Origin: Mustelus asterias
Taxonomy: Eukaryota
DNA: 64,000 bases
Direction of reading: 5' to 3'
NCBI RefSeq assembly: GCF_964213995.1
Contig: NC_135830.1
Location: 12,710,001-12,774,000, forward strand
Of this stretch, positions 23,349 through 62,403 are shown in pieces (within the stretch, counting starts at the first letter, position 1; the number at the start of each line of letters is the position of its first letter). The notes below the pieces were generated by a model. That model was not told the DNA's origin and ran no database searches. It saw nothing but the letters and a program-made list of their open reading frames with translations. Made by a program: the position numbers and the translations under genes.

Positions 23349-26300
23349 TAGAACATAGAACAGTAGAGCATAGAACAGGCCCTTCGGCCCACGATGTTGT
23401 GCCGAGCTTTATCTGTAACCAAGATCAAGCTATCCCACTCCCTATCATCCTGGTGTGCTCCATGTGCCTATCCAATAACCGCTTAAATGTTCCTAAAGTG
23501 TCTGACTCCACTATCACTGCAGGCAGTCCATTCCATACCTCATTGACTCTCTGCGTAAAGAACCTACCTCTGATATCCTTCCTATATTTCCCACCATGAA
23601 CCCTATAGTTATGCCCCCTTGTAATAGCTCCATCCATCCGAGGAAATAGTCTTTGAACGTTCACTCTATCTATCCCCTTCATCATTTATAAACCTCTAAT
23701 AAGTCTCCCCTCAGCCTCCTCCGCTCCAGAGAGAACAGCCCTAGCTCCCTCAACCTTTCCTCATGAGACCGACCCTCCAAACGAGGCAGCATCCTGGTTA
23801 CTCTCCTCTGCACTCTTTCCAGCCCTTCCACATCCTTCTTATAGCGAGGTGACGAGAACTGCACATAATATTCCAAATGTGGTCTCACCAAGGTCCTGTG
23901 CAGTTGCAGCATAACCCCACGGCTCTTAAACTCCAACCCCCTGTTAATAAAAGCTAACACACTATAGGCCTGCTTCACAGCTCTATCCACTTGAGTGGCA
24001 ACCTTCAGAGATCTGTGGATATGGACCCCAATATCTCTCTGTTCCTACACAGTCTTCAGAACCCTACCTTTGACCCTGTAATCCACATTTAAATTAGTCC
24101 TATCAAAAAGAATCACCTCACATTTATCAGGGTTAAACTCCATTTGCCATTTTTCAGCCCAGCTTTGCATCCTATCTATGTCTCTTTGCAGCTTACAACA
24201 GCCCTCCACCTCATTCACTACTCCACCAATCTTGGTGTCATCAGCAAATTTACTGATCCACCCTTCAGCCCCCTCCTCTAAGTCATTAATAAAAATCACA
24301 AAGAGCAGAGGACCAAGCACTGATCCCTCTGGCACTCCGCTAGCAACCTGCCTGCAATCCGAAAATTTTCCATCCACCACCACCCTCTGTCCTCGTTCAG
24401 ATAGCCAGTTACCTATCCAATCTGCCAACTTTCCCTCTACCCCACACCTCCTTACTTTCATCATAAGCTGGCCACGGGGGACCTTATCAAATGCCTTACT
24501 AAAATCCATGGATATGACATCAACTGCCCTACCTTCATCAACACACTTAGTTACCTCATCAAAAAATTCAATCAAGTTTGTGAGGCACGACGTGCCCTTC
24601 ACGAATCCGTGTTGACTATCCCGGATTAATCCACATCTTTCTAAATGGTCGTAAATCCCATCCCTAAGGAACTTTTCCATCAATTTACCAACCACCGAAA
24701 TAAGACTAACCGGTCTATAATTACCAGGGTCATTTCTATTCCCTTTCTTAAACAGAGGAACAACATTCACCACTCTCCAGTCCTCTGGCACCATCCCCGT
24801 GGACAGTGAGGACCCAAAGATCAAAGCCAAAGGCTCTGCAATCTCATCCCTTGCCTCCCAAAGAATCCTAGGATACCTTTCATCAGGCCCAGGGGACTTA
24901 TCGACCTTCAGTTTATTCCAAACTGCCAGGACATCCTCCCTCCGAACAACTATTTCCTCCAGCCTATTAGCCTGTAACACCTTCTCTTCCTCAAAAACAT
25001 GGCCCCTCTCCTTGGTGAACACTGAAGAAAAGTATTCATTCATCACCGCGCCTATCTCTACTGACTCCATACACAAGTTCCCACGACTGTCCTTGACCGG
25101 CCCTAACCTCACCCTGGTCATTCTGTTATTCCGCACATAAGAGTAAAAAGCCTTGGGGTTTTCCTTGATCCGACCCGCCAAGGACTTCTCATGTCCCCTC
25201 CTCGTTCTCCTAAGCCCCTTTTTCAACTCATTCCTTGCTATCTTGTAACCCTCAATCGAGCCATTTGAACCTTGTTTCCTCATCCCTACATAAGCTTCCC
25301 TCTTCCTTTTCACAAGACATTCCACCTCTTTTGTGAACCATGGTTCCCTCACTCGGCCATTTCCTCCCTGCCTGACAGGGACATACCTATCAAGGACACC
25401 CAGTATTTGTTCCTTGAAAAAGTTCCACTTTTCATTAGTGCCTTTCCCTGACAGTTTCTGTTCCCATCTTATGCCCCCTAATTCTTGCCTAATCGCATCA
25501 TAATTACCTCTCCCCCAATTGTAAACCTTGCCCTGCCGTATGACCCTATCCCTCTCCATTTCAATAACAAAAGACACCGAATTGTGGTTACTATCTCCAA
25601 AGTGCTCTCACACAACCAAATCTAACAGTTGGCCCGGTTCATTTCCCAGTACCAAATCCAATGTGGCCTCACCTCTTGTCGGCCTATCCACACATTGTGT
25701 CAGGAAACCCTCCTGCACACACTGCACAAAAACTGCCCCATCCGAACTATTTGACCTATAAAGATTCCAATCAATATTTGGAAAGTTAAAGTCCCCCATG
25801 ACAACTACCCTGTGACCCCCACACATATCCATAATCTGCTTAGCAATTTCTTCCTCCACATCTCTATTACTATTTGGGGACCTATACTAAACTCCTAACA
25901 ACGTGACCGCCTCTTTCCTATTTCTAATTTCAGCCCATATTACCTCCGTGTGCAGATCCCCCTCGAAGTGCCTTTCCGCAGCCGTTCGACTATCCTTGAT
26001 TAACATTGCCACTCCTCCACCTCTTTTACCAGCTTCCCTACTCTTACTGAAACATCTATATCCCGGAACGTCCAACAACCATTCCTGTCCTTGTTCTACC
26101 CACGTCTCCGTAATGGCCACATCATCGTAGTCCCAAGTACCAATCCACGCCCCAAGTTCATCAACTTAGTTCCGGATGCTCCTTGCATTGAAGTAGGCAC
26201 ATTTCAACCCACCTTCCTGTCTACCAGTACCCACCCTTGACCTTGATAACTTCCCCAGTACCCCACCGCCCTCAACACTGACTTCTGGACTACAACTCCT

Positions 26301-31112: not shown

Positions 31113-31437
31113 CAAGAGTGCTGAGACAGGGAGGGAGGGAGAACCCAGCCCATCCTAGTGCTCTAACAGACTCTGTCTCTCCTCCTCCGTTCACTGAATG
31201 ATGCTCTGCGTGATGCGGCCAGGTGGCGCAGGAGGAAATGGAAAATACATCCGAAAACACAATCTCCTGTGAAAACCCAGTTACCTCAATCGCAACATTA
31301 TGACAGCAGCGGAATTGCACTAGGCACGAGCTCTTCTCCTGCTGTAATCTCGATGTCAACCCGTTTCTCACTTTACTGCAACAGATGACAGCAGTAAATC
31401 GAACTGCTATTCCAGAGGTTTTGTTGGGAGAGTCAGA

Positions 31438-31855
31438 ATGGATCCCATGTCGTCCCGTCGTCTCATTATATTGTGGTTTGTACTCGGTACGTATGGCCGT
31501 ATGTACTCATGTCGTACTTCCATCACAACCCACTGTTCATTTTTATTTCAGGGAGGATTCGCGCAGATTCGGTATCACAATCCAAGACAGAACTCTACGT
31601 GACTGGAGGAGACAGTGTGATTACAGGCTGTCCTTACAAAACAAATCTTTTTAATCCTGATCTGTATTGGCACAGACAGCACACAAACTACTTTCTGAGT
31701 TTTAGTTTGCTTCAGGATAACAATCGAAGAACAATCGCAGTTTTTACCAGGGGAAGATTCGAGGCTGGTCAGACGAAGACAGAAAAGAGATTTCCCTTAA
31801 AGATCATTCGAACAGAAATCCAGAACACTGCCTTCTATTTCGATGGGTTGAAGAT
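31438..31855 (+). pseudogene. TCR alpha/delta-type V pseudogene: leader exon 31438-31486, V exon 31552-31855
   Basis: Leader MDPMSSRRLIILWFVL-G|gtacgt; acceptor tttcag|; V DSVSQS..GC..LYWHRQ..GRF..TAFYFD with the second Cys lost; heptamer mutated. Confidence 0.8.
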
Positions 31856-31894
31856 CGCAGTGGTTGAAAACTTATCTGTCTCTGAACAAAAATC
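31856..31894 (+). promoter_or_regulatory. Defective 23-RSS (CGCAGTG-23-ACAAAAATC)
   Basis: Exact 23-nt spacer and near-consensus nonamer; the essential CAC reads CGC. Confidence 0.85.
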
Positions 31895-32180
31895 TCAGGG
31901 CTGACGAACAGGCGTTCTCTCAAGATCACAGGAACCTTCGTTGCTCTGTAAGTGACTGTCCTGTTCAGAATCTGTTAGTCCTGCTTCTGAGTTACAAAGT
32001 TTTAGGGTCAAGGCTCACTCCTGAGACTCCAGCCTGTAATCCAGGCTGTTGCCGAGTGGCAGCACCGAGGGCGTGCCAGCAATGGTTGTCATATTTCGCA
32101 TCAGACATTAATCTTAGGGACACACACTTCATTTATGTAAAATATCCCAGACCACTATTTTAGAAAATCATTGCAGATTT

Positions 32181-34094: not shown

Positions 34095-36276
34095 ATGCAT
34101 GGACCAGCGAAAGGTCTCTTCTTCGCCATTTTTTATCCCATTCTCGCTGCCATTGGTGTTCCTGGTAGGTGAAAGATCCCAAATAATTCTCATGACTTGA
34201 AATGTATGGCGTTGCATAAACATTAACCTTTTATTGTTGAAAATTCGGTTTTATTCGAATGTAGTAAAATGCTATCTAGTGTTTTCAGTGTTTTGCACGA
34301 TAAAGTCTATAAAGTGACCTATATTTCATCCACTGGTATGCACAGTCTCAAAAAATGAGCTATCGCAATCTAATAATTCAATTAGATGCATTGACATAGA
34401 ACATTCATTCACTGCTTACATGAACCTATGCTGTGACCTCCAGCAGTTAGTAATCGTTGATTTGTAGTGAGGCGGCACTGGGCTGCCCACATCGTTACTG
34501 AGGTTTTAAGAACTCATTATTGAAACTTTTGAAAAAGGTGTGGGGGTTATGCATTATGCATGTTGCCTTGTGTTCGTAAGTCTGGTAAATTTCGGATAAT
34601 TATATTTTTAATCACTAGCTGTATGCATGTAGATATGGCAAGGCGAATATGTCTTGTCCATATCTAGCTTTCATTTGAGAAGGCGATGTAGCGTTTGTTT
34701 CTTGAAACACTCGGATAAGTAGAATGGGGATACTTCAGAAGACTTTAACAAATCAACTTTATATTGACCGACAAAATGACTTAGAATTGTTCAACGAATT
34801 TATTTTCTAAGGATCGTCCTGAAGCACAAAGGGAAAGTTTAGTCTTTGAAAGAAGGAGTTCCAGAGGTTAGGGTCTCAGCAGGTAAAGGCACACTGAAAA
34901 GATCAAATCAGGGGCATGGAAGTCCATATTCTGAGATATGGTGTGATCTCAGATAGTTGTAGTATGTTACCAAAATCTGGAAAGGCAAGATTATGGAGGG
35001 ATTTATAATTCGAAGGACGAGATAATAAAAACAGAGACGCAGCCTGAATGGCAGCCGATAGGGCTGATGGATGGATGGGATTGGTACGGATAAGAACAAC
35101 GACAGCAAATTTTCAGAGAATCTGAAATTTGACAGTTATCTGAGGGGATCAACTCAGTGACCAGGGGGCAGAGTTACAATTTGGACTGATTGCAATGTCT
35201 CCTGATTTAAAATAACTTTAATCCAGTTTTGAATGTCGTACCATTGCCAAAGACTTTGCAATCACTGGAATCTGGAGTTGGCAAAGTGAAGGATGAGGAT
35301 GTTTTCAGTAACTGATTGGATGGCGCAGCAGATGGTGTTTAGAGCCCTCTCGGTAACACCTCTCTCTGTCTCTTTCTATCTCACAGCCAACTTGGTGACG
35401 ATCGTAATCTTATCCCGAGGACGTTGCGGACTGTCACGCTGCATCACCTACTACCTGATCGCGATAGCATTGACTGATTTCCTTGTCATCATCACCACCA
35501 TAATCCTCAACCGGATTGGCCGCATCTACTTTCAGAACAGCGTCCTGTCTACCACCCCCGCATGCACACTCAGCAATCTGCTGGTCTATTTTGCCCGGGA
35601 TATGTCCGTCTGGTTGACAGTGGCTTTCACCATCGACCGTTTTGTGGCCATCTGCTGCCAGAGCCTGAAGACCAGATACTGCACCGATAAAACATCATTG
35701 CTGGTCATAGGAATAGTCTGTGCCCTGAGCTGTGTCAGGAATGTCCCTTTCTACTTCACTTACCAGCCCTTGTACACCCTGCACGGGGTGCCCTGGTTCT
35801 GTGCTTTTAAGTCCAGCTATTACACGCTGCCCGCCTGGCAGGCCTATGACTGGCTGGACTGCATCTTAACTCCGTTTCTCCCGTTCTTCCTCATCCTGCT
35901 TCTTAACGCTCTAACCGTAAAACACATCTTAGCGGCCAGCAGAGCCCGCAGGAGACTCCGGGGCACTGAGAGTCACAGGGACCCAGAGATGGCCAACCGC
36001 AAGAGGTCCATCATCCTGCTCTTCGCCATCGCCCTCAGCTTCCTCCTCCTCTGGTTCACCTTTATCGCACACTTCCTCTATGTGCGGATTACAGGTGAGG
36101 GCTACCGCACCAGCCTGGATTTCAAAGACCCACGGTACATTTTTCAGGAAGCAGCAAACATGCTCCAGCTAGTCAGTTCCTGCAACAACGTCTTCATCTA
36201 CGCAGTCGCCCAGACCAAGTTCCGAGAGGACCTGAAGAAGGTTCTGCTCTGCCCCTTCACCACGCTCACTGGCTAA
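34095..36276 (+). CDS. Class A GPCR, GPR139/GPR142-like. Exon 1 34095-34164, exon 2 35387-36276; 319 aa
   Basis: Exon 1 MHGPAKGLFFAIFYPILAAIGVP-G|gtaggt splices in phase 1 to cag|CC AAC (ANLVTIVILSRGRCGLS). Seven hydrophobic segments, IDRFVAIC, TM7 NVFIY, no stops. Confidence 0.88.
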
Positions 36277-42096: not shown

Positions 42097-42748
42097 GAGT
42101 GGATAGAGCTGTGAAGAAGGCCTATAGTGTATTAGCTTTTATTAACAGGGGGTTGGAGTTTAAGAGCCGTGGGGTTATGCTGCAACTGTACAGGACCTTG
42201 GTGAGACCACATTTGGAATATTGTGTGCAGTTCTGGTCACCTCACTATAAGAAGGATATGGAAGCGCTGGAAAGAGTGCAGAGCAGATTTACTAGGATGC
42301 TGCCTGGTTTGGATGGTAGGTCTTATGAGGAAAGGTTGAAGGAGCTAGGGCTGTTCTCTCTGGAGCGGAGGAGGCTGAGGGAAGACTTAATAGAGGTTTA
42401 TAAAATAATGAAGGGGATAGATAGAGTGAACGTTCAAAGACTATTTCCTCGGGTGGATGGAGCTATTACAAGGGGGCATAACTATAGGGTTCATGGTGGG
42501 AGATATAGGAAGGATATCAGAGGTAGTTTCTTTACGCAGAGAGTGGTTTGGGTGTGGAATGGACTGCCTGCAGTGATAGTGGAGTCAGACACTTTAGGAA
42601 CATTTAAGCGGTTATTGGATAGGCACATGGAGCACACCAGGATGATAGGGAGTGGGATAGCTTGATCTTGGTTTCAGATAAAGCTCGGCACAACATCGTG
42701 GGCCGAAGGGCCTGTTCTGTGCTGTACTGTTCTATGTTCTATGTTCTA
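42097..42748 (+). mobile_element. Young CR1 3' fragment, same subfamily as 20411-21828
   Basis: ORF 42099-42665 is nearly identical to the C-terminus of ORF 20467-21738; TTCTATG tail. Confidence 0.93.
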
Positions 42749-43060
42749 AAAGCAGCGGCATGAGTGAGGGGCCGTTCGGTTTTGAAAATAGCGCTATTAG
42801 GATATGCCGTGGAGCTAGGCATTTAACAATGTCTAAATTACGTACTTTGTAATTCAAGAGTTATTTACAATTTCACAGAGAACACTTTACAGAAAGATAT
42901 AGCTTAAAGTTGACCCCAGGTGAATACACAAACTGAGCGTCACAATGAGAACAGCATATTGATCGTCTAAACTGGCAATTGTCTAAAACTGGAGAGAAAA
43001 AAACGGGGCCTCTACATAAGGTGCAGTGAGAAATGCTAAATAACAAATAACCACTAATTT

Positions 43061-43275
43061 ACAGTACGAAGTCTCATAACACCAGGTTAAAGTCCAAAAG
43101 GTTCATTTGGTATCATGAGCTTTTGGAGAGCTGCTCCTTCATCAGGTGACTCAGTTGATGAAGGAGCAGCGCTTCGAAAGCTTGTGATATCAAATAAACC
43201 CGTTGCACTTTAACCTGGTGTTGTGAGACTTCTTACTGTGCACACCCCCGTCCAACGCCGGCATCTTCACATCAT
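43061..43275. mobile_element. Palindromic Penelope-like element remnant with a degenerate hammerhead-ribozyme motif
   Basis: Inverted arms 43061-43146 and ~43155-43239; (C/T)TGATGA-AGGAGCAGCGCTTC-GAAA motif; flanking CACTA(A/G)TTTACA direct repeat. Confidence 0.7.
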
Positions 43276-43534
43276 CACTAGTTTACAAATCAATTCAAAC
43301 AATGGTGAAACTCAAAGATGCAATCATATTATCGACATGGTTATCTCATTCAATTAAAACAGAAAAGAATAACAAAAATCCAGCTTATATTGCTATCCTG
43401 ATTTTGGATTCGGATCTGTTCACTGGAGGCAGTTTAACTTTGAGGATCACGATGATAACGTACTTTCATTCCATAGGACCATTTTGTGAATAAACTGATG
43501 GGAAAATACCACACGATTTCCGAAATTCAATCAA

Positions 43535-43543
43535 TCACTCCAC
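43535..43543 (-). CDS. Ig heavy-chain transmembrane exon TM2 (VE-stop)
   Basis: tattttatttctattttgcag|GTG GAG TGA, phase 0, 141 bp after the TM1 donor. Confidence 0.8.
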   Translation of the reverse strand: ME

Positions 43544-43684
43544 CTGCAAAATAGAAATAAAATAACTAAACAACCGTTTTATGTGTTTGAGATATTTACC
43601 TAAAAGCTCTTATTAATTGAGACTTCTGGACATTTTCAATATTCTCCTATCTGATTCAAATATGAGTGGATTGAATCATCTCAC

Positions 43685-43812
43685 CTTCATCAGAGTGACT
43701 GCAGCGCTGTACGACATGCTCAGGAAGAACAGGACGATGAATGTACAAGCGGTTGTCCAGATGCTACTGTTATCATCCTCCTTGACTGCAATCCAGATGG
43801 ACTCTGTGGAAT
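43685..43812 (-). CDS. Ig heavy-chain transmembrane exon TM1
   Basis: tag|(D)STESIWIAVKEDDNSSIWTTACTFIVLFFLSMSYSAAVTLMK|gtgaga matches the IgH membrane motif WTTASTFIVLFxLSxxYSxxVT. Open frame, phase-1 acceptor. Confidence 0.9.
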
Positions 43813-44292
43813 CTACCGTATGGTATAGGGGATATTTTTAGATCCTCTGTTAACCTAGGATATTATTTTGGTTGTTCGTCTTTTATTTCTTCAAGCTATT
43901 ATGTTGTTTTCTGATATAATTCTCAAGCCTGTCTGTTATTAAATTAGTCGCGTAATGCAATTTTAAATACATATATTATTAAGTTAACCTCTGTCAGCAA
44001 GATAAGGTGTTACAATCTCCACAACCGTTCTTCTTTTATTTTCCACAGACAGTCCGTTTTCGAAAATATATTTTATTCCTCAACCTGAGGCGTCTATTTC
44101 GTCTGGTGTAATTTTCCGCCAACTGTCAGTAAACAATACTATGAAGACTAAACAGGTGATGTTAACTGATATGGACTGAGTAACTTGGGTCTACATTCTC
44201 CCCAGTTTAGAAAAATGAGAGGAGATCACATTGAAACAAAATAATCGGAAAGGATGTGACGAGGTAGACACTTCATCGCAACATCGTTCATG

Positions 44293-44456
44293 GCTAAACC
44301 ACCCAAACTGCACATCTTTGGAGTGTGGGATGAAACCGGAGAACCCGGGGGAAACTCACGCAGGTACGAGGAGAACGTGCAGACTCAACACAGACAGTCC
44401 ACCCAAGGTCGGAGTTGAACCCGGGTCCCAATCGCTGTGAGGCAGCACTGCCACCC
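44293..44456 (-). mobile_element. HE1-like SINE fragment
   Basis: GGGTTCAACTCCGACCTTGGG..GAGTCTGCACGTTCTCC core. Confidence 0.75.
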
Positions 44457-46058
44457 AGGTCTGTGCACCTGCATATGAGGACGTAGGTACATCTGAACAC
44501 AAATAATTCAGTTATTTACAAAAGGACTTTGCAAATAATTCCAATTCTCTTTAAGCATGTCATGATAATTCATTGAGTATTCACTTACAGATACTATGCC
44601 TCAGTCAAAACCTAAATGCAATGACTGTCTTGGACGCTGTTGAAAGTGATGTACAGCTGGCCATTCCGCTGCCAAGGCAATGCATCTTTCAAATGACTCA
44701 CTGAATTTCTATCCTCTTTTTCTCGGTCTCAAACTACCTAAATCAGATAGTCTCCCTTCTTTCTCTCAGTTTCCATGAAATCACTTACATAGGCACCGAA
44801 GAACCGAACTTGACAAAACAAATGTTTAAGTTTGCACCTTGTGACTGAAAGTATGAAACCCAAAACTCTCATCAGAGGAAAATTCAGTACCAGAAGAACA
44901 TTAGCTCGCTCACTGAGCCTCTCTCCTCGCTTCATTTCAAACGACACCTAACAACTTGAAACTTTCAAATTAAAACACTCTTTGGGAAAAATATCGCTTT
45001 AATTTACCTTCTTTTCTCCCAGTAAGAAAACTCGGGCTATCTCCCCTTCAATTAATGCATTTAAAACCCAAATTGTGTCCTTTCTTGAATTGTTTAAAAT
45101 GGGAATGGAGGTAAATGTAATGCTGAGAGCGGCAGCAGTCTGCGTATTTGTTCTTGATGCTGTCAGAAGAGAGTTCACCCTCACAGGCAGAAAGACTGTT
45201 CACGGTGATAACATCAAACTGACGCCAGCTGTTTCATTCTCAGGTAACACAACTTCCTGTTTTTCTGCTGCTGGTTCGAAACCTCACATCTCACTTCTGA
45301 GCAGAAAATAAATCCAGCAGCAACAATCTGGCGAGAACATCTGTCAATGCGGCCTATATCTGTCCACAGAGTCAGAGCAGAGTCACACAGATCACATTGC
45401 GGTGACATTTACAAATGAGCCTCTTGTAATCATTTAAAATTTCCATTCCAGGACATAACTGGATAGTCAGTGGATCAGTCACTGCGTTCCCTCCGTTCTG
45501 TGAAGGTGGGAAATAATAGCTTGCTGCCTTTCATTATTTTATCAATTTCCTTTCCTCTTTAACTTGCTTTTTTTTCTTTTAACTGTCAGCATCCCGTCTT
45601 CCATTCGCATTTTAATTGACCCATCTCTACCTTTCTCCATTGGCCTGTGACTCTATTTAATGAAAGTGTGCAAAGTCATGATGGTAGGAGTGCAGTAACT
45701 AAAGAAAATCTTTTCAACTGGGAGGAGGGTTGGTAACCAATGGGCACGTGTTTATTTTATTGAACAGGAAGATAGAAGGATAATTCATACTTTTATGCCG
45801 TGACTTGTTATGAACTGGAATAAATAGCTTGAAAGAGTGATGGAGTCAGACTTCACAGTAACTTTGGAAAATAAATTAGATACATACTTGATGGAGTAAA
45901 ATTTGAAGGATCATGGTGAATAGGCCCATTTTTATGGTTTACCTATATCATTGTCCTGGCTTTTTCTCTATATCTATCACTGTCCTTTACAGAGATTGAA
46001 TAAAATGCAATATTTATACAGCTGTCTTCTTGCACTAACCTGTCTTTTAACAGAATGT

Positions 46059-46083: not shown

Positions 46084-47964
46084 TCGATGATTACCAGCAA
46101 ACATTCATAAATTCATTGCTATTTACAAACCATCACCATGAACAGAATAACACTGGATAGAATTTGTTTAGGAAAAGCACAATTACCCTTCATATTTGTT
46201 GCACTTTTGTTCCCTCTGATGAGGTTTTGATGTTTTAACTTTTCAGTCATCACATGTCCTATGCTGATGATTTAAACCTGGGTTTCTACAAACTGCCGGA
46301 TCTGACTTTTGTCTGTCTGTGTAAATGGGGAACTGTTGGTAAGATTGAGAAGGAACAGATTTTCTTCTGTTCCTCTGAGAAATGCAGCATTGTCACCTCA
46401 GATTTCAGAAATATCTAGAGTCCACCATGATTCTTCCCCCCACCTATCCCCCCCTCCCGCCACCCCCCCCACCACCCGCCCCACCCCCCCACCGCCCCAC
46501 CTCCCCCTCCCCGCCCCACCCCCCACCGCCCTTGGGAATAACAGCTTTTAATCAGTTAATCACTCCGGCCTTTGCCATGGTGTTTCCGCTGTGTGTTTGC
46601 CACACAAATTCCTGTGTCACTTACCCTGACACAGAAACCTGCGCAAAGGCCCCAAGATTCATTGCTTCCTTCGATCAGGATCCAGTCTGACCCCAGGCCC
46701 GGAACTCTCTCTTCTCAATGCATTGTAGCGGTCGTTCAAATATTCAAATTCTAACGCTGTAATTCTGTATGATTATTTTTAGTGACCGTTAGCCAGTCAG
46801 ATCTGAATAAGAACCTATCTCTCGTATTGTTGTATTTGACTCCTCCCAATTATTATTGAACAAAATACTTTCTTTCTGGAATGATCACACAAATAACTAT
46901 TTATTCTCATGTTATATCAGATCCTGTCTCTCTTATTCTATCTGGCCCATATATTGGTTCCCATTACTCTGACGGACAGTTTATGTTATCATTGCATTGA
47001 CACATCTGTCTATACAAGACCAGATTCAGCCTCTGTGATTGCTGCACTATTTCTAATCATTCGTGGGATGCGGGTATCGCTGGCTCGGTCGCCCCTTTCC
47101 TTATTGCCCTTGAGAAAGTGGCGATGAGCGACTATCGTGAACAGCAGTAGTCCATATTCACCAGCCCGTGTTAATGTATTTATTATACAAGGTCAGGTCT
47201 CTCTTTATGATACATCTGATCTTGAGATATTTTATATTAGGTTATCCAGATTATACAACCTATGGACGGTCCAAAATGTTTAGGATGATCATCATGGAAT
47301 TGGTGAAAGTGACGTTTAAAGACTGTAGAAGCTGAAATATTGAACCTTCTCTGAACAGCAGCAGATGTTTCAACCCTTTGCACCAATAGGAATAAGAAGT
47401 CTGAGAATTACCGATGTATTGATATCCTGTCAGGTATAGGTCCGGGTGCAATTTCGCCAACATTTTTACAAACGAACACACATTCGAGGTATATACCAAG
47501 AGTTTTTGGTGAAATGCTGAGACTAAAAATTGCCAGAATACGCTCTCCATTCGCGATTTAATTTATTCCATTTACCAACTGATCTCTAAAGCCAGATAGA
47601 TCGACGCTGAGAACGAAATATTCCGTCTGAAATAACTTTGTAAACAAGAGCACACAACGGAATGGTTATCAATAAATAGTTACAGTTTTAAATGCACTTC
47701 AATTGAAATACGTGAACTATTTGGGGTTTTCGTACATTCACAGCAGGCGGAAATGGATTGAAGGTTGTCACTGGAACAATTGAAGGGAAATTGTCCAAAA
47801 TAATGATAATAATCTTCAAAGAAATTTATTAGAAAATAAAATATTTGACACAACGAAGCATTCAAATATCAAATATCCAAGGCGTGGACTGATGTGATAT
47901 TTAACAAACATAGAGCCATAGAATCCCTACATCATAGAATAATATAATCCCGATAGTACAGCAC

Positions 47965-50056: not shown

Positions 50057-50995
50057 ATGTGGTGCAGTGGAATGAAAAGCGAGGCAATGCTCATTAAAGT
50101 AATAATTGAGAGAGGATAGAGTGAAAAATGAACAGAGATACGGTTTAGCGCATTAGCAACAGAGAGAGGATCAAGCGCAATAAAACTGACACCAGGCCGA
50201 GTGTAATTTTGTCTGATTCTGGACATTGTGTATAAACTGAGTCAAAGCCTGATGCAGTAACTGTAGACCAAGATCTTAGATTAACATTAGCTTTGACATG
50301 GACAAGTGCAGCAATAAATGAAACATGACAGAGGACAATAATAACAGAGACAGCATGTTGTTTGGAATAAACATGGAGGTGGACTGATACAGCAGTGATT
50401 GAGATGTGGTCTAGATTAGTGTACGTGTGCAGGTTCCAGCAACGTAATAACTGCGACAGAGTCACATGTAATGCAATGAGTAACATTTTCTGGTACAGTA
50501 TCAGGGGAGATAAGGTCTCGTGAAGTAACAACTGAGAAATGGAGAATTGTGGTATTAGTCGAGAATTAAATATGTGCTGCCGTAACTGCCAGAATGCAGG
50601 GTGTAATATCAACTGAGGCTTAGTTCAGTATAATAGCAACTGGGATTTTGCCGAGTGCACAAGCGACTGAAAATTGTTGTCATGTAATCAGAAATGACAC
50701 AGATTCCGTGTCATATAAACAGAGGCAGATCTAGTTTTAGATGAGCAGAGGTTGAGTCCATTGCAATAATAATTGAAATTATGTATGTGTCATTGGAGAG
50801 CAAATTGAATGAATCATATCCCGAATGATGAGTGAATTGCTGGCAATTGATCATCTCATCATCTCACAGAAATTCTTGATATGTGTGCTAATTGGTGAAA
50901 ATGATGGCTAAAATGCACCTACTCGTAACGGAATCGGAGTGGACAACAGAAATGTCCGTTGACCTCAGGCGGGAACTTCCGGTCTCGATCCAGCG

Positions 50996-52044: not shown

Positions 52045-53970
52045 ATAGAATGCCTACTGTATAGAAGAAGACCATTTGACACGTCGTGTCTGTTTGAGCC
52101 CTCCAAAAGGAGCAATCCACCCAATTGCACTCTATACTCCGCAGTCTAGCATTTTGTTCGCTTCCGGTTAATAATCCAAAACCATTTTGAAAGCATCAAT
52201 TGACCCTGTCTCTACCACACTCTCAAACAGCTAATTCCAGATCTGAATCACTCACTGTGTGAAAACATTTTTCCCCTTGCGTCTGTGGCCAAATAACTTC
52301 AATCTGTGCCCTGTGGTACAAGATCCTTCCGCCAATGTGAAATGTTCGTCTCCATCTACCCTGTACAGACCATTCGTTATTGTTAATACCTTTATCAGAT
52401 CACCTCCGTGCCAACCCGTCAAGGAAAGCAGTCTAGTTTAGTGTATACGTGGCAGATTTTAGCAAAGTTAGAACTAAGACAGAGCCTCGTGTAATGCAAA
52501 CAGCAACATGTTCAGTTAGTATCAGGAGAGACAGGATCTAGTGAATTAAAAACTGAGGAATTGATACTATTATGATATTCGCTGAGATTTAATTCTGTGC
52601 TGTCACATATCAATTGAGGCTTGGTTCAGTATAATATCAATTGGGATTTTTCCCAGTACAGAAACAGCTGATAATTATGGGCACACAATCTCACAAACGA
52701 TTTAGTGTCACATAAACAGAGACTGGGTCAAGTTTAAGATGAGTAGAGACTGAGTCCTTTGCAGTAATAATTGAGACAATCTCTGTTTCATGCGATGCCA
52801 ACAAACGCGGTTTCATTGCCATCTACTGGATGCACTTTGCTGTTGCAGATATTGTGAAAATGGCTACTTTTATTACTTATGACTGCACTCGGCATTAGCA
52901 AAGTGGATGAGTTCTTAAGGACCAGAGTCTTATGGCCAACAATACTGAAACTAGCTTTAAATTTTAATTGCATGTTTGAATCCCACGTCGCACTGCCCGG
53001 ACTCAGCCATCATCAAAATGAATGGCGGAGCAGGTCCGAAGGGCCGAATGCCCGACTCCGGCTTCTGGTTTCTAAATACAGCTGTTGACCCTTTATCTTA
53101 ATTGTCCTCGATCTTTTCAATTTATTTTCCCACCCTGCCCCTTCCCATCGTCAGCTTTTCACTCATTGTTGTACTTTCTTTCTACGAATATATAGCTTAA
53201 CGACTCAAAATATAGTTTTCTGCTTGGAATATTGAATCGGTCTGGCAAAACTCCAGTTCTCCTCAAACGGAAACTGTCACGTATTCTCTCTCCTTCTGTC
53301 CCCCGACATCGGAACGCTTATCCAAATATCTACCAGTGGGCGGCAGATCACAATATCCCTTCTGTGGATCACAGTACCTACAGTGACTTCATCAATGTTT
53401 CCCGAAAGACCTGATGCATCTTGAAATAAATGTAAGTTAAATGGTTGAATCCAACTTGCCTCAAATGATTTGGAGAAGGTACAGCGGTAAACATTCATCA
53501 CATAAATATCCGCATGTTGAAGGATTGGAGCCTGATATCGGTCAGAGGAAAGAGCGAGTGAAGGAAAGCGTGTCTGATGCAGGAAAGGATGTGAAAATGT
53601 GAATGAAAACCCAATTTGAGAGCTGGTTTTTGGATTACTTCACTGTCACCATTTCAGCGCCATTTCAGTGTATAATGAGTGAAAGTGACCCTGAAAGTTT
53701 TTCCGGGCCAGATGGTATTGAATTTTAGTTCATGAGAACTAACTTTACATTTCCCCGAGGGACTGTCAAGCTGTTGTCTGAGCTTCTCCCCCGTTGTTTG
53801 AACACATTGGTATCGAGTTACTGAAAGTGCTGACGTTATTCTCTCTTAAAGAGAGTCCCAATCCTGGGGTTCATGGCTCATTGAATGAAGGAGAACAAAC
53901 CAGACTGATGATAGTAATATTAATCAGACTCGGTCATTGAGTGGAATCCTGCTTACATTAGGGGAAGAAT

Positions 53971-54477: not shown

Positions 54478-54516
54478 GGTTTCTGGGCAGCTCTCTCCGT
54501 GTTCTGTATCACTGTG
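54478..54516 (-). promoter_or_regulatory. Duplicate 23-RSS (CACAGTG-23-CCAGAAACC)
   Basis: 61-bp tandem copy of the primary RSS. Confidence 0.85.
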
Positions 54517-54538
54517 TCTGTAATCCTCACTATGTTCA

Positions 54539-54577
54539 GGTTTCTGTACAGCTCTCTCCGTGTTCTGTGTCACTGTG
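54539..54577 (-). promoter_or_regulatory. 23-RSS of the supporting V (CACAGTG-23-ACAGAAACC)
   Basis: Consensus heptamer, 23-nt spacer, 8/9 nonamer. Confidence 0.93.
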
Positions 54578-54883
54578 CTGTGCGCTCACTCAATGCACAG
54601 TAATAAACAGCGGAGTCGCTCAGTTGTACTTTGAAGATCTCTAGCCGGCTGATTTTGACTGAAGAATGGCCATAAATGGAAATTCTGCCCCCGGGAGTGT
54701 TTTCTTTATTCTCCGCTCCTGATGTGTGAGTCTGAAGCAGGTACTTCGGAGCCTGTCCTGGGGACTGACGATACCAGTGTACTGTGTACTGACAGATTCC
54801 TGAATATTCACAGATTAGAGTAACCGTGTCACCGACAGTAGAGGTTTGGAGAAGTGAACTTGGTGACACAGATGAGCTGGAAC
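54578..54883 (-). CDS. NAR-TCR supporting TCRdelta V segment (no functional leader, extra CDR1 Cys)
   Basis: cctgcag|(G)SSSSVSP..VTLICEYSGICQYTVHWYRQSPGQAPKYLL..LSDSAVYYCALS; intact; phase matches the NAR J donor. Confidence 0.9.
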
Positions 54884-54988
54884 CTGCAGGATAGAAATAA
54901 AATGAATTGTTTTTTTTTAGCCACTGTTTAGCCCGGAAAAACTTGGCAATCTGGCCTGTCTGTTGCGGCACTTTATTTCATTGAATTT

Positions 54989-55300
54989 GGGGTTGGCACA
55001 ATGGCACTTCTGTCTCACAGTGTCAGGGAACCAGGTTCTATTCCGGCCTCGGGTCACTGTCTGCCTCGAGTTTGCACGTTCTCCCCGCGTCCGCGTGGGT
55101 TTCCTGCGGGTCCTCCGGTTTCCTCCCACATCTAAAAATGTGCAGGTTAGGTTGATTGGGCATGCTAAATTGACCACAGTCTTCCAGCGGCATTAGCACA
55201 GTAAATGTCTGGGGTTATGGGAATAGGGCCTCTGTTGGGATGCGGTCGATAGAGATTCGATTGGCCGAATGGTCTTCTGTCCTGTCGGGATTCTGTGAAT
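54989..55300 (+). mobile_element. Older HE1-like SINE
   Basis: GGTCACTGTCTGC..GAGTTTGCACGTTCTCCCCG core. Confidence 0.8.
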
Positions 55301-55382
55301 TTGTTTCAAATTGCATTGATTATTGAAAGTAGACAAGCGTAGCAGATCTTCAGGTTTTTTTTCCACAGATAACAACACTCAC

Positions 55383-55437
55383 CTGAAGTTCACTGCGGAA
55401 GGGGCAGTGCTGGGAGAAGCTTTAAATTAACGTTCAA
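55383..55437 (-). pseudogene. Vestigial leader exon of the supporting V
   Basis: TTG-NVNLKLLPALPLPQ*TS-G|gtgagt: no ATG, in-frame TGA, consensus phase-1 donor. Confidence 0.55.
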
Positions 55438-55951
55438 ACGGTAATTGAGGAGGAAAAATACTTCTGGGACAGGGCAAGATTCCACTGACAAGGGGACGAA
55501 AGAAGGGCGAATGCGGACATTGGCAGCACTTTCAAATTACTGACATTATTGACAAAATTATGGGTTTTTTGCGGAATATGACACTATTTTTATTAAATAT
55601 CTGCTAATAAATATATTGGTGAAATATCAAACCAGAAAAATAAATCATAAATGTTCACTCTTCTCGCTGAATCAATTGCTGTCTAGATTTGATTGCCCAA
55701 AGGAAAATGAGGCTTTTTAATGTCCCTGCGCATATCAAGGTTCAGCACAGGGCAGCGATATTGGTCCACACCGATTAATCCGAACGGACAATATATATCT
55801 CTGGGTCGAAGACCGACCATTGGCCGTAGTTCAGCACTGCAAGGTAACTCCTGTCTGCCGTTGGGCTATTTGTCTGTTTCAATCAATCAATTCAATCGTT
55901 TTACTTCTATTAGAAATATTTGCAAGTTGATTTCATATTATTTCTATATCT

Positions 55952-56287
55952 GGGCGGCACGGTAGCACAGTGGTTAGCACTGCTGCTTCACAGCTCCAGG
56001 GTCCCGGGTTCGATTCCCGGCTCGGGTCACTGTCTGTGTGGAGTTTGCACATTCTCCTCGTGTCTGCGTGGGTTTCCTCCGGGTGCTCCGGTTTCCTCCC
56101 ACAGTCCAAAGATGTGTGGGTTAGGTTGATTGGCCAGGTTAAAAATAAAATTGCCCCTTAGAGTCCTGAGATGCGTGGATTAGCGGGTAAATATGTGGGG
56201 GTAGGGCCTGGGTGGGATTGTGGTCGGTGCAGACTCGATGGGCCGAATGGCCTCCTTCTGCACTGTAGGGTTTCTATGATTCTATGA
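55952..56287 (+). mobile_element. HE1 SINE, full length
   Basis: Head and tail as above. Confidence 0.92.
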
Positions 56288-56581
56288 GTTGTTTTCTGTC
56301 TGTTGTGGTTTCGAACCGTCATTGGAACTTGTCCTAATTTCTCTCAGTTGTCGGTTGGGTTCAGCGAGTTCAATTTCCGCAGTGGTTTTATTGTTACTCA
56401 CTGGGAACTGCGTTCAGGGTATATGCGAATTTAAATCCATTTCATCCATTGGCTGACTGTTCTCTGTCCTTTCCGAACAGTCTAACATTTACATTCTACA
56501 CTTTCCACTTACCACGAATAAGCCACTCGGCCCAGCTGGTCGACGCTTGTTCTTGTACATCACTTCTCCTTGTGAACACGT

Positions 56582-56917
56582 GCGGCACGGTAGCACAGTG
56601 GTTAACGTTGCTGCTTCACAGCGCCAGGAACCTGGGTTCGCTTCCCGGCTTGGGACACTGTCTGTGTGGAGTTTGCACATTCTCCTCGTGTCTGCTTGGG
56701 TTCCCTCCGGGCGCTCCGGTTTCATCCCAAAGGTGTACGGGTTAGATTGATTGGCCATGCTAAAAATTGCCCCTTAGTGTCCTGCGATGCGTAGGTTAGA
56801 GGGATTAACGGGTAAATATTTAGGGATATGGGGGTAGGGTCTGGGTGGGATTGTGGTCCGTGCAGACTCGATGGGCCAAATGGCCTGTTTCTGCACTGTA
56901 GGGTTTCTTTCTTTCTA
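56582..56917 (+). mobile_element. HE1 SINE
   Basis: Head and tail as above, (TTTC)n end. Confidence 0.88.
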
Positions 56918-57544
56918 AGAAATAACCATTTACAGCCTGACAGTGTGTCTATCTATTCCTCTCACCCGCTCATATTTTTCAAGCTGTACCATAAATTCAT
57001 CGCGCCGTTTCTCCAAACAAACTCTCATGTGTCTCCGTGTAAATCTACCCAAATGTCTGTTCAGGTAGTAATTTCATGGGTAAATGTCTCCTTGTTCTGG
57101 AGACACAGGTTCGAATGCTGCCTCGACAGCTGGTAGAATTTGACTTCAATAAATAAACAAACCTGGAATTAACTTACCGTTGACCATGAAACAATCATCG
57201 ATTGTTGGAAAATTCCATCTGGTTTCCTTCCTTTAGGGAAGGAAATCTGCCGTCCTTACTTGGTCTGGCCTACACATAGCTGCAGAGACACGGCCATCTG
57301 TTTGACTCTCAACTACTCTCCGAAATGGTCTAGCCAGCCATTGATTTAAAGGGTGACTAATAAATGCTGGCCAGCGAGCGAAACCATGCCACACAAATGA
57401 ATTCAATAAACCTCTCCCACCGGAGGATCAGTTTCTGCACATGTACCTCCTTGAAACAATAACATAATGTTCAATGTTTTTATACTATTCTTTTCATGTC
57501 TTCCTAGCCTCCGGGAGACAAACGGCAATGCTTTTCCAAGCTTT

Positions 57545-57901
57545 CATAGAACATAGATCATAGAACAGCACAGCACAGAACAGGCCCTTCGGCCCACGAT
57601 GTTGTGCCGAGCTTTGTCTGAAACCCAGATCAAGCTATTTCTTCCCTCGCATCCCGAAGTACTCCATGTGCCTATCCAATAGCTTCTTAAATATTCCTAA
57701 AGTTTCTGACTCCACTATCCCTGCAGGCAGTCCATTCCACACCCCAACCACTCTCTGAGTAAAAAACCTACCTCGGACATCCTTCCTATATCTCCCACCA
57801 TGAACCCTATAGTTATGCCCCCTAGTTACCGCTCCATTCACCCGAGGAAATAGTCTTTGAACGTTCACTCTATCTATCCCCTTCATCATCTTATAAACCT
57901 C
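57545..57901 (-). mobile_element. CR1 3' fragment
   Basis: MMKGIDRVNVQRLFPR...FFTQRVVGVWN and tail. Confidence 0.9.
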
Positions 57902-59266
57902 ATAGACATTATTGATTACTTATTTTCTCCGGAATGCAAGAAATTCAATCTGATAATAAGATACATAAGAAATAGACACATGGTAGACCAATCCAACTTG
58001 AGGGCCCGCTGTACAATTCAAGAAGTTTAGTTCTGATCGTCTACCTTAATGCTAACCTATTCCCAAATCCATTCATACCATTAGTATTCAAAAATAAAAT
58101 CTATGGAACGGTTCAGCACTCTCAGCCTCGACACAACCCAATCCCTGAAGGATTGATTATGCTTCAATGAGCACAATGCCATGTTTTTGAAATCGAGAAA
58201 AAATAATGCAAACAGATTGGTCCACCGTTGTCTTTCAATATGTGTAAGAGAATGCAATTCACACTTTTTACAATTCTGTCAAAGCAGAAATGATTGTTGA
58301 TAGGAAGAAAATAAAAATCCGATAGAATATAATTATTTTAGTCACTGATTGTGCAAGAATGAAATGCCAGATTCAACTATAAAATGATCTCTTGAAGCTA
58401 TTTGCGTCATGTTCCCCTTTCCCTGACGCGGCAGGTAAAGGACCAGCCGCTGCAATATTGGGTTATCTCTCCCGGTATCTTATCCACATTTCCTGGAGCA
58501 GAGAGAAATCCTGCGCCCGGTGACTCCGCTCTCTTCCAGTGGAGAGCAGGGAGCAGAGTTCGGAGTGTCTACAATATGCTTTTTATTCATTCATGAGACA
58601 TGGGCAGCATCGCTGGCTGGCTGCCCATCCCTAGTTACCCAGGGGCAGTTGAGAGTCAACCACATTGCTGTGGCTCTGCAGTCACATGCGCGCCGGACCA
58701 GGTAATCACGACAGATTTCCTTCCCTGAAACACATTAGTGAAGCAGATGGGTTTTTCGAACAACCGAGAATGGTTTCATGATCTTCAGTAGATTCTTGAT
58801 TCCAGATACTTATATTGAATTGAAATTCCACCACCTGCCCTCGCGGGATTCACAGAACTTTAGCTGTGTTTTTGAATGAATAGTCCAGCGATAATTCCAC
58901 TTCGCCACCGCCTCCCCTAATGTGCGCTCATTGAAAGCAGTATGGAGAGTGAGAGTGCAGGCTGTTATGAAGATCACCCGATACCTCCCTTAAACCAATA
59001 ATGGTCCAGGAGGGGTCAGCTGAATCTTCTTCCCCGTAGGATACTTGTCATTTGGGGTCTCACACTGCTTCAATCCGTTCTCACAGCCAAACCCGAGTTC
59101 AGTTTATTACCATGTTCCCAAGTCTAAATCTGCAATTGAGAATCTTCCTCTGGAAACCACCCTGCTTTTGAAGCAGAGCATTGAAGTAATACTAAAAACG
59201 AATATAAACTGACGGTGAACACTAACCTGGACAGTCTGTAACACGGAGTGATTTGGAGTCACTTAC

Positions 59267-59319
59267 CGGCTGTGACAGTCATCACAGTCCCAGACCCATC
59301 TGCAAATCTCCATTCTCCC
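59267..59319 (-). CDS. NAR-TCR J segment
   Basis: GEWRFADGSGTVMTVTA-G|gtaagt: GxG-T-x-x-T-V J motif, phase-1 donor, preceded by an RSS. Confidence 0.88.
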
Positions 59320-59358
59320 CACAGTGACACCGCTCTCAGTCAGCCCAATACAAGAATG
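59320..59358 (-). promoter_or_regulatory. 23-RSS of the J (plus strand reads CACAGTG-23-ACAAGAATG)
   Basis: Consensus heptamer abutting the J; 23-nt spacer; no nonamer at 12 nt. Confidence 0.85.
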
Positions 59359-59686
59359 ACTGACACCTCAAACTAACAGCCAGCATTACCGGACACTCAG
59401 CGTTTCTCAATTATTCACGGGACTGGGGTCAATAATGAACATAGATTGCATCAAAAAAATAATTGAATCACACTGTCCTTTGTGATTCTCTGAGCTCCTG
59501 GGAAAATAGAACAAGGGCAGAGATGCAAGGTTATTATTAACGGAGAAAAACCTTAAAGAATGAGAACTGATCGGAGGAAATTACACTGAAATTAAACCAG
59601 GTTGAATTGGGAATAACATCATCCTGACAGCTTAAGTTACCTAAGCTGGGAATTGCTGGGAGTTACTGGGGTTTTTTTTGTCCTTG

Positions 59687-59714
59687 GGTATTTGTCCTTC
59701 TCCATTCCATTGTG
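59687..59714 (-). promoter_or_regulatory. 12-RSS of the NAR V (CACAATG-12-ACAAATACC)
   Basis: Heptamer 59708-59714, spacer 59696-59707, nonamer 59687-59695 (8/9). Confidence 0.85.
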
Positions 59715-60189
59715 GTGTCCTCTGTGTGTAGTACCAGTACTGAGCTTTACAGTAATAGGTGGCTGTGTCTTCAACTCTCATGTCCTGAATTTCCAGTGAA
59801 AATTTCTTTTCTCCTTTAGTCACCGACACAACAAATCTCCCTCCGCTGGAGATCTGCTCCCGCTCTGTCCCTTTCTGGGTTTGTCTGAAAAAATGACCAG
59901 TTTCTAAATCATAAACTCCATGTAAAACACAGGTGATGGTGAGAGACTGACACTCCTTCCTGGTCACGGCTGTCGGACTCTGTGTCACTGACTGACTGAA
60001 CGATCCTGGAAATTAAACACAGAGAGTTTAAGAGACCATCGGAGCTGAACCACACAACTATAGTGTGACAATGTCTGTAAGGGGGGTGGACTGAAGCAGC
60101 TTTATATTCAATCCACACAATGTAGTTTAATGTGATCGGTACTCACGCGATAAATAGACACACACACTGAAAACAAGGAGGACTCTCAT
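59715..60189 (-). CDS. NAR-TCR V (VNAR-like): leader exon 60147-60189, V exon 59715-60005
   Basis: MRVLLVFSVCVYLS-R|..SFSQSVTQSPTAVTRKECQSLTITCVL..EQISSGGRFVVSV..FSLEIQDMRVEDTATYYCKA. CDR2 deletion and ISxGGR motif typical of VNAR; GT-AG intron; open frame. Confidence 0.92.
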
Positions 60190-61970: not shown

Positions 61971-62056
61971 TCAATGCTTCTTTGTTGAGGAGAATGAATG
62001 CTTACTGAGGTCCCCCACATTTAAACATATGTTTATTTTCTGGTTACCATTTGACG

Positions 62057-62364: not shown

Positions 62365-62403
62365 CACAGTGATACAAACTGATACACGCGCCGAACAGAA
62401 GCT
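62365..62403 (+). promoter_or_regulatory. 23-RSS (CACAGTG-23-ACAGAAGCT)
   Basis: Consensus heptamer and 23-nt spacer. Confidence 0.87.

What the first reader, a model, noticed from the sequence alone, without database searches (positions are those of the whole stretch)
43535..43812. Orphan, open-frame IgH transmembrane exons downstream of a NAR-TCR cassette: possible single-domain VNAR-TM receptor or relic of the donor Ig cluster
Seen: TM1 and TM2 of an Ig heavy chain (..IWTTACTFIVLFFLSMSYSAAVTLMK|VE*) with GT/AG sites, open frames and the YS pair, on the same strand as the NAR-TCR cassette and ~10.8 kb 3' of the supporting V. I found no CH exon or secretory tail between 43812 and 54478. The NAR J donor (GCC G|gt, 59267) and TM1 acceptor (ag|AT TCC) are both phase 1, so splicing gives L-VJ-(A)DSTES..TM-KVE in frame. 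Known: this TM motif and its YS pair mediate CD79a/b association of the BCR; the usual tail is KVK; NAR-TCR is thought to derive from IgNAR-type V material placed in the TCRdelta locus. Inference: either a fossil of the inserted IgH/IgNAR cluster, or a constant-domain-less membrane VNAR receptor made by skipping the supporting V.
Basis: partly seen in the sequence, partly recalled or inferred. Interest (0 to 1): 0.85.

Follow-up and report, generated by a model that had tools for sequence, protein, structure and literature searches.

The report
Orphan IgM membrane exons, TCR array
Two intact membrane-anchor exons of an IgM-type antibody heavy chain sit alone among shark T-cell-receptor V genes, most likely the leftover tail of a broken IgM gene cluster and not part of a new receptor.

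Summary
On the minus strand, TM1 (43812-43685) and TM2 (43543-43535) have AG/GT/AG sites, an open frame and exon borders at the place where IgM chains change from Cmu4 to the membrane tail. The match is not chance: tblastn E=6e-13 in the window and 16 HMMER hits at E<=0.001 among 1.84 billion proteins.

The exons are mu-type. They are 64-74% identical to seven shark IgM chains, and the best solved relatives are human membrane mu chains. That speaks against a fossil of an IgNAR donor cluster, though no shark IgW or IgNAR membrane tail could be retrieved to compare.

No constant-domain exon lies anywhere in the searched window. No RSS lies between TM1 and the supporting V.

The in-frame path from the NAR J carries no weight: every donor and acceptor read in the cassette is phase 1. 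Expression could not be tested.

Best reading: the detached, still undecayed 3' end of an IgM cluster. A V-only membrane receptor is not excluded but has no support.

The scan noted similar orphan IgH/IgM membrane exons on other pieces of this genome (s1-890432, s1-890517, s1-892804). I could not check them.

The parts
43685..43812 (-). TM1 exon of an IgM (mu) type heavy chain: an acidic extracellular spacer followed by the membrane helix. Phase-1 acceptor, GT donor.
   Evidence: sequence and sites. (HMMER and tblastn hits to Ig heavy chains). (64-74% identity to 7 shark IgM chains). (best PDB matches are membrane mu chains of solved B-cell receptors).
43544..43684 (-). TM1-TM2 intron, 141 nt, gt...ag. 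Because the intron is kept, the pair was copied or left behind as genomic DNA and is not a retrocopy.
43535..43543 (-). TM2 exon: GTG GAG TGA (Val-Glu-stop) behind a strong pyrimidine tract (15 of 20).
   Evidence: E-ending tails are seen in 3 of 9 aligned mu chains.
43280..44288 (.). Block with no second copy in the window that holds the two exons. It is flanked by interspersed repeats: 43061-43279 and 42098-42753 on one side, and a SINE-like copy at 44289-44466 on the other.
54578..54883 (-). Leaderless supporting V-delta exon of the NAR-TCR cassette, 10.8 kb upstream of TM1. Its acceptor has 16 of 20 pyrimidines.
   Evidence: V-set, E=8.4e-15.
54478..54577 (-). Two tandem 23-spacer RSSs behind the supporting V (54577-54539 and 54516-54478).
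59267..59319 (-). NAR-TCR J segment, with a phase-1 donor after 59267 (CAGCCG|gtaagt).
59715..60005 (-). NAR-TCR V exon. The leader exon is 60189-60147. A 12-spacer RSS lies at 59714-59687.
   Evidence: V-set, E=3.9e-8.

Best explanation
These are the two membrane exons (TM1 and TM2) of an IgM-type (mu) heavy-chain gene that have become separated from their V, D, J and Cmu exons. They now lie alone inside the TCR alpha/delta V array, downstream of a NAR-TCR cassette.

[quoted passage not shown] A cluster broken by deletion, duplication or insertion can therefore leave its 3' end behind.

Shown: the exon identity, the mu type, the intact sites and frame, the kept intron, and the absence of any constant exon or RSS nearby.

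Inferred: the pair is not used by the NAR-TCR cassette, and it is either a young relic or kept intact for a reason not yet seen.
For: - Exon identity and borders: TM1 starts where shark mu chains change from ...DKSS to DS.D.IW, with the same phase.
- Mu type: 31/42 identical to P0023 and to P0022 (Scyliorhinus torazame); 64-69% to P0004, P0005, P0007, P0020 and P0021. Six of these seven align at 61-71% over all, or in P0022 two thirds, of the 461-aa chain P0024, which a source names 'Ig heavy chain C region, membrane-bound form' of Heterodontus. P0005 aligns only over its Cmu1, at 58%.
- Delta-type tails of sturgeon and caecilian chains are less alike, at 45-64% over shorter spans.
- Best PDB matches are membrane mu isoforms: 6 sequences, E=3.4e-6 to 4.9e-5. 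Gamma-1 scores E=0.0033.
- No C-type exon in the window: tblastn with 16 Ig queries, and a local HMM built from 62 C1 domains that picked up only the V exons.
- No RSS between 43.8 and 54.4 kb.
- Heterodontus IgM clusters span about 18-20 kb (PMC2191167, abstract), yet the 20 kb upstream of TM1 holds only TCR-type V segments and repeats.
- A precedent for membrane exons outliving their constant exons is the rabbit C-delta remnant (PMC5568218, abstract).
Against: - Nothing in the pair is decayed. The frame is open and all three splice dinucleotides are kept. Only 4 of 42 residues are peculiar to it, which lies within the 0-15 range of own-only residues of the nine aligned mu chains.
- In a crude neutral simulation, such a unit stays intact with probability 0.33 at 5% divergence and 0.12 at 10%. 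So it is either young or under constraint.
- First-stage notes report further intact orphan IgH/IgM membrane exons elsewhere in this genome. If they are true and independent, that would hint at retention. I could not check them.
- No RNA evidence either way.
- No DNA of a true IgM cluster could be fetched, so the extent of mu-derived flanking DNA and the age of the separation are unknown.
- No shark IgW or IgNAR membrane sequence was retrieved, so the mu assignment rests on shark mu chains against non-shark delta-type tails.
Confidence: 0.62

Rival explanations
1. Live 3' exons of a distant Ig-type gene. The pair would still serve an IgM cluster, or an IgM-derived gene such as a V-Cmu1-TM form, whose other exons lie upstream beyond the window end, with TCR V segments sitting in a very long last intron.
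For: The exons are fully intact. Unchecked first-stage notes on other pieces of this genome speak of an IgM cluster with no visible membrane exons, and of membrane exons 28 kb downstream of a cluster. A bamboo-shark gene model, P0005, joins V-Cmu1 directly to such a tail.
Against: No C exon lies in the 20 kb upstream. The notes for the 25 kb beyond the window end mention only V segments. Published shark clusters span about 18-20 kb in all (PMC2191167, abstract). A functional-looking NAR-TCR cassette with its own promoter side and RSSs lies in between.
Confidence: 0.12
2. A membrane VNAR receptor without a constant domain. After NAR V-J joining, and before or without rearrangement of the supporting V, the J donor at 59267 would skip the supporting V and splice to TM1. 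The product would be leader-VJ-spacer-membrane helix-KVE, anchored through a B-cell-receptor-type helix.
For: The J donor and TM1 acceptor are both phase 1, and the join reads through. The unrearranged supporting V has an acceptor but no donor, so it may be poorly defined as an internal exon (inference). The TM pair is intact, and 13 of 13 columns invariant across the ten aligned sequences are kept, the YS tyrosine among them; its serine matches 7 of the 9 mu chains.
Against: Phase 1 is shared by every donor and acceptor of the cassette, so being in frame says nothing. The TM1 acceptor has 12 of 20 pyrimidines and lies 15.5 kb from the donor; the supporting-V acceptor has 16 of 20 at 4.4 kb. 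No AATAAA or ATTAAA occurs within 1391 nt of the stop. No V-TM protein was among the 4 candidates of 152-483 aa, and there were no short fragments. The serine of TTAST, invariant in 9 of 9 mu chains, is a cysteine here. From recall: this helix needs CD79, which T cells lack.
Confidence: 0.06
3. Fossil of the Ig cluster that exchanged the NAR V with the TCR delta locus. The membrane exons would be what remains of an IgNAR/IgW-type cluster.
For: Same strand and order as V-J...TM. The cysteine in TTACTF is shared with sturgeon delta-type tails P0013 and P0001.
Against: The spacer and helix are closest to shark mu chains: 64-74% over all 42 residues, against 45-64% over 33-51 residues for delta-type tails. 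The papers read favour transfer of the NAR-TCR V into an IgW cluster, not the reverse (PMC12227049 section 6; PMC4279169 passage). The supporting V and 10.8 kb of repeats lie between J and TM1. Caveat: no shark IgW or IgNAR membrane tail could be retrieved for a direct comparison.
Confidence: 0.07

Closest known systems
Membrane exons of shark IgM (mu) heavy-chain clusters: gene models P0023 and P0022 of Scyliorhinus torazame, P0004, P0020 and P0021, and the named Heterodontus francisci membrane-bound form P0024
   Same: Same exon start at the Cmu4/membrane junction, same acidic spacer motif, same helix pattern, and a two-codon last exon. 31/42 identical to P0023 and to P0022, whose tails also end in E.
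   Different: No V, D, J or Cmu exon is linked to it. The serine of TTAST is a cysteine, and three spacer residues are its own.
Human membrane IgM heavy chain in solved B-cell receptor complexes (PDB 8e4c, 8ema, 7xt6, 7wsp, 7xq8)
   Same: The helix aligns over residues 8/9 to 42 with E=3.4e-6 to 4.9e-5, and WTTA.TFIVLF.LS..YS..VTL.K is shared.
   Different: Only the membrane segment is present here. Association with CD79 is recalled knowledge for the human chain and was not tested for this sequence.
Remnant of the rabbit IgD (C-delta) gene (PMC5568218, abstract read)
   Same: A constant gene that lost exons while its transmembrane exons stayed largely intact but unused.
   Different: The rabbit remnant keeps truncated CH2 and CH3 exons and sits in its original place downstream of IgM. 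Here no C exon is left, and the neighbours are TCR V segments.
V-Cmu1-TM gene model P0005 of Chiloscyllium punctatum (the scan's note s1-891830 describes the same plan in this genome)
   Same: A mu-type tail 28/37 identical to this one, attached to fewer than four C domains.
   Different: P0005 has a V and a Cmu1 domain, by its precomputed Pfam families. The window has neither next to the membrane exons. P0005 is a gene prediction, not a transcript.

Membership tests
IgM (mu) heavy-chain membrane exons TM1/TM2 | TM1 begins in phase 1 at the junction used by the internal Cmu4 donor and encodes an acidic spacer plus the membrane helix | tested here: met
   ag|AT TCC at 43812. The alignment starts at the ...KSS|DS... 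junction of 7 shark mu chains.
IgM (mu) heavy-chain membrane exons TM1/TM2 | Conserved helix pattern (W-T-T-A-S-T-F ... L-F-x-L-S ... Y-S ... V-T-L-x-K) | tested here: met
   All 13 columns invariant across the ten aligned sequences are kept. Of the 8 nearly invariant columns, 7 are kept and one (S to C at residue 22) is not.
IgM (mu) heavy-chain membrane exons TM1/TM2 | Short TM2 exon giving a two-residue cytoplasmic end (K-V-K or similar) and a stop | tested here: met
   GTG GAG TGA at 43543-43535. Tails ending in E occur in 3 of 9 aligned mu chains.
IgM (mu) heavy-chain membrane exons TM1/TM2 | Closer to mu than to other isotypes | tested here: inconclusive
   Shark mu 64-74%; non-shark delta-type tails 45-64%; human mu better than gamma-1 in the PDB. 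No shark IgW or IgNAR membrane tail was available for comparison.
Functional IgM minicluster | VH, D, JH and Cmu1-4 exons within roughly 20 kb upstream on the same strand | tested here: not met
   No C exon in the window. The only V hits are the NAR-TCR V and TCR-type V segments. No RSS at 43.8-54.4 kb.
Functional IgM minicluster | Transcripts that splice Cmu4 to TM1 | not testable with these tools
NAR-TCR (doubly rearranging TCR delta) | NAR V-(D)-J spliced to a leaderless supporting V-delta that rearranges to D/J/C-delta | tested here: met
   This holds for the cassette at 54478-60189, not for the TM exons: leader, V, J donor, supporting-V acceptor and 23-RSSs are all present. The TM exons are not a known part of this system.
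Constant-domain-less V-TM receptor (hypothetical) | A transcript or protein joining a V-J directly to this TM1 | tested here: inconclusive
   None among the 4 candidates of 152-483 aa, none of 23-73 aa, and none among the 14 of 16 HMMER hits that I read. The databases hold few shark transcripts, and no reads could be laid.

The most novel reading that the evidence does not exclude
Intact mu-type membrane exon pairs are kept on purpose at several places in the TCR V arrays of this shark. They would serve as alternative last exons, so that a rearranged NAR V-J (or another V-J with a phase-1 donor) can be displayed as a single-V, constant-domain-less membrane receptor using a B-cell-receptor-type anchor. 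The undecayed state of this pair and the scan's unchecked notes of other intact orphan pairs next to TCR V segments (s1-890432, s1-890517, s1-892804) do not exclude this.
Probability: 0.06. Interest if true: 0.85.

Novelty: new member of a known kind. Interest (0 to 1): 0.3.

Why it matters
If it is a relic, it is a small physical trace of how IgM miniclusters and TCR V arrays have been shuffled together in elasmobranchs. That fits the recently reported linkage of all IgH isotypes with TCR alpha/delta. It also warns annotators that Ig membrane exons near TCR V segments need not mark a gene.

If the pair proved to be spliced to a V-J, it would be an antigen receptor with no constant domain. That would bear on how Ig and TCR chains exchanged parts. 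Nothing found here supports that yet.

Tried and rejected
**Chance match.** Rejected on E-values.

**Retrocopy.** Rejected, because the 141-nt intron is kept.

**Hidden or decayed C exons.** tblastn with 16 Ig chains at E<=10 and a local C1 HMM at E<=50 gave only V exons and noise. Pfam on three open minus-strand stretches (47263-47562, 50148-50624, 53280-53639) and one plus-strand stretch (45003-45308) gave nothing.

**Relics of D or J.** A strict RSS scan found none between TM1 and the supporting V. The thresholds were strict enough to miss the NAR J's own RSS, so weak relics could be missed too.

**V-TM products in protein databases.**
- The P0005 tail search covering 152-483 aa returned 4 proteins, all of them V-C...TM or C...TM chains.
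- The P0004 tail search covering 257-819 aa returned 7, all IgM-type.
- The 42-aa exon alone returned nothing.

**Isotype tree with IgW and IgNAR.** Not possible, because no such membrane tails were returned by any search. PMC11641339 (nurse shark IgNAR) holds none of my five terms.

**Selection test.** Not possible without DNA of relatives. I replaced it with counts of own-only residues and a crude neutral simulation.

**In print?** Four searches listed no paper on orphan Ig membrane exons in a shark TCR locus. I read section 6 and passages of PMC12227049, passages of PMC6795676 and PMC4279169, and the abstracts of PMC5568218 and PMC2191167. The last I saw only in the search listing. PMC7909615 and PMC1458790 are not held, so what I say of the NAR-TCR splice plan beyond the window's own sequence is recalled.

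Full report
**What is there.** Reading the minus strand shows a 128-nt exon at 43812-43685 with acceptor tag|AT and donor AAG|gtgaga, a 141-nt intron, and a 9-nt exon at 43543-43535 reading GTG GAG TGA (coordinates checked). The 42 full codons translate to an acidic spacer followed by a hydrophobic helix. That helix carries the polar pattern typical of Ig heavy-chain membrane segments.

**Is it more than chance?** phmmer of the 42 residues against 1.84 billion representatives gave 16 proteins at E<=0.001. I read 14 of them:
- Thirteen are Ig heavy chains, or short fragments with this segment at or near their C-terminus or at an internal IgM/IgD junction.
- One (P0003) is a low-complexity repeat protein.
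- P0015 and P0016, both multi-stretch hits, I did not read.

Source names place the closest hits in Chiloscyllium punctatum, and others in Callorhinchus, Acipenser, Xenopus and a caecilian. tblastn of these chains against the window hit this exon with E down to 6e-13. Otherwise only the V exons were hit.

**Isotype.**
- A search with the tail of P0004 returned seven proteins, all IgM-type, including a Heterodontus chain that its source names 'Ig heavy chain C region, membrane-bound form' (P0024).
- Five of the shark models align with P0024 over its whole 461 residues at 61-71%. P0022 aligns over two thirds of it at 66%, and P0005 over Cmu1 only, at 58%.
- The orphan TM1 is 74, 74, 69, 67, 64, 68 and 64% identical to seven shark mu tails, and 53 and 52% to Heterodontus and Callorhinchus.
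- Likeness runs through the extracellular spacer (IW.E..EDDN.NIW) as well as the helix.
- Delta-type tails inside the sturgeon and caecilian models are less alike.
- In the PDB, the six best sequences are membrane mu isoforms from solved B-cell receptors; gamma-1 is weaker.

I therefore call the exons mu-type. The caveat is that no shark IgW or IgNAR membrane tail was returned by any search. The KVE end is not unusual: two catshark models end in KIE and the Callorhinchus model ends in KVE.

**Is it orphan?** Yes, within the window.
- tblastn at E<=10 found no constant-domain match with E<0.1 anywhere.
- A local HMM built from 62 C1 domains of the fetched chains scored only the supporting V (E=1.1e-6), the NAR V (E=7.8e-4) and noise. 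So an intact Ig-fold exon would have been seen.
- Pfam found nothing in the long open stretches between TM1 and the supporting V.
- A strict RSS scan found the 12-RSS at the NAR V and two tandem 23-RSSs behind the supporting V, but none between 43.8 and 54.4 kb.
- The exons sit in about 1 kb that has no second copy in the window (43280-44288), between interspersed repeats.
- Heterodontus clusters span about 18-20 kb in all (PMC2191167, abstract from the search listing). The 20 kb upstream here holds a NAR-TCR cassette and repeats instead.

**The cassette.**
- leader exon 60189-60147;
- V exon from 60005 (Pfam V-set);
- J ending at 59267 with a gtaagt donor;
- a leaderless supporting V from 54883 (V-set, E=8.4e-15);
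- tandem 23-RSSs behind it.

**Does the splice argument carry weight?** No. The leader donor, J donor, supporting-V acceptor and TM1 acceptor are all phase 1, as expected for Ig-superfamily exons. Any J would therefore read in frame into TM1. On site quality the path is disfavoured. The TM1 acceptor has 12 of 20 pyrimidines and lies 15,454 nt from the J donor. The supporting-V acceptor has 16 of 20 at 4,383 nt. No AATAAA or ATTAAA follows the stop for 1391 nt, and the first one lies inside an antisense LINE piece.

**Relic or kept?** The pair shows no decay.
- Only 4 of 42 residues are found in none of the nine mu chains compared: three in the spacer and one in the helix. That one is a cysteine in place of the serine invariant in 9 of 9.
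- The nine chains themselves have 0 to 15 such own-only residues each.
- A crude neutral simulation (substitutions, plus indels at one tenth of their rate) keeps the frame and three splice dinucleotides with probability 0.64, 0.33, 0.12 and 0.025 at 2, 5, 10 and 20% divergence.

So the pair has either been separated only briefly or is under constraint.

**Expression.** The look-up of sequencing runs gave four runs of one study, of unknown kind and none on record as RNA. Nothing was laid, so expression is untested. Protein searches for a V-TM product found none: 4 candidates of 152-483 aa, all with C domains, and nothing at 23-73 aa. That is weak negative evidence, since few shark transcripts are in those collections.

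**Context from papers.**
[quoted passage not shown] It says TCR-type V exons lie between IgH clusters, and that the NAR V most likely moved from NAR-TCR into an IgW cluster.
- PMC4279169 (passage) says the same of IgNAR's origin.
- PMC6795676 (passage) states that shark membrane IgM has four C domains.
- PMC5568218 (abstract) describes a rabbit C-delta remnant with largely intact but non-functional membrane exons. It is the nearest precedent.

Four paper searches listed nothing on orphan Ig membrane exons in a shark TCR locus. Supplements were closed.

**Context from the scan (unchecked AI notes).** Other pieces of this genome carry notes of:
- orphan IgH/IgM membrane exons in TCR V arrays (s1-890432, with the same 278-letter span; s1-890517; s1-892804);
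- an IgM cluster without visible membrane exons (s1-890507);
- a V-Cmu1-TM gene (s1-891830).

They fit a picture of IgM clusters repeatedly broken up among TCR V arrays. If the copies are independent and old, they would instead argue for retention.

**Verdict.**

| Reading | Confidence |
|---|---|
| Detached 3' end of an IgM cluster, not a part of NAR-TCR | 0.62 |
| Live exons of a distant Ig-type gene | 0.12 |
| Fossil of an IgNAR/IgW donor cluster | 0.07 |
| VNAR-TM receptor | 0.06 |

It is a real but probably ordinary feature. The open point is why it is so well preserved.

Noticed in passing
window 54478-54577 (-): Two complete 23-spacer RSSs in tandem, 61 bp apart, directly behind the supporting V-delta. 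The first has heptamer CACAGTG and nonamer ACAGAAACC; the second has CACAGTG and CCAGAAACC. Scan notes report longer arrays of this kind behind other supporting V segments.
   Followed up: partly
window 35290-36273 (+): A 328-codon open stretch with a rhodopsin-family 7TM domain (Pfam 7tm_1, E=2.5e-20). It looks like an intronless GPCR gene lying inside the TCR V array.
   Followed up: no
window 238-2040 and 6595-8325 (+): A direct duplication with a period of about 6.36 kb: the open stretches are identical or nearly so. The first 19 kb is also full of a coding-like minisatellite whose translation repeats SLGSVSVFTVIIGECVSIYSDHWGVCQYLQ-like units.
   Followed up: no
window 61825-62379 (+) and 31398-31901 (+): Two V-type exons on the strand opposite to the NAR-TCR cassette. 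The first is a clear V-set match (E=9e-13). The second is weak and below Pfam's cut-off (22.5 against 26 bits), so it is probably a decayed V.
   Followed up: no
protein P0005 (Chiloscyllium punctatum, GCC37862.1): A gene model that joins a germline-joined-looking VDJ and Cmu1 directly to a mu membrane tail, with no Cmu2-4. The scan's note s1-891830 describes the same plan in this genome. It could be a real short IgM-derived receptor or a prediction artefact.
   Followed up: no
window 20407-21735 (+), 24048-25607 (-), 62753-64000 (+): Long open reverse-transcriptase stretches of one LINE family, plus many copies of a SINE whose translation reads ...HILLVSAWVSSGCSGFLPQSKDV.... Several of them flank the TM exons.
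   Followed up: no
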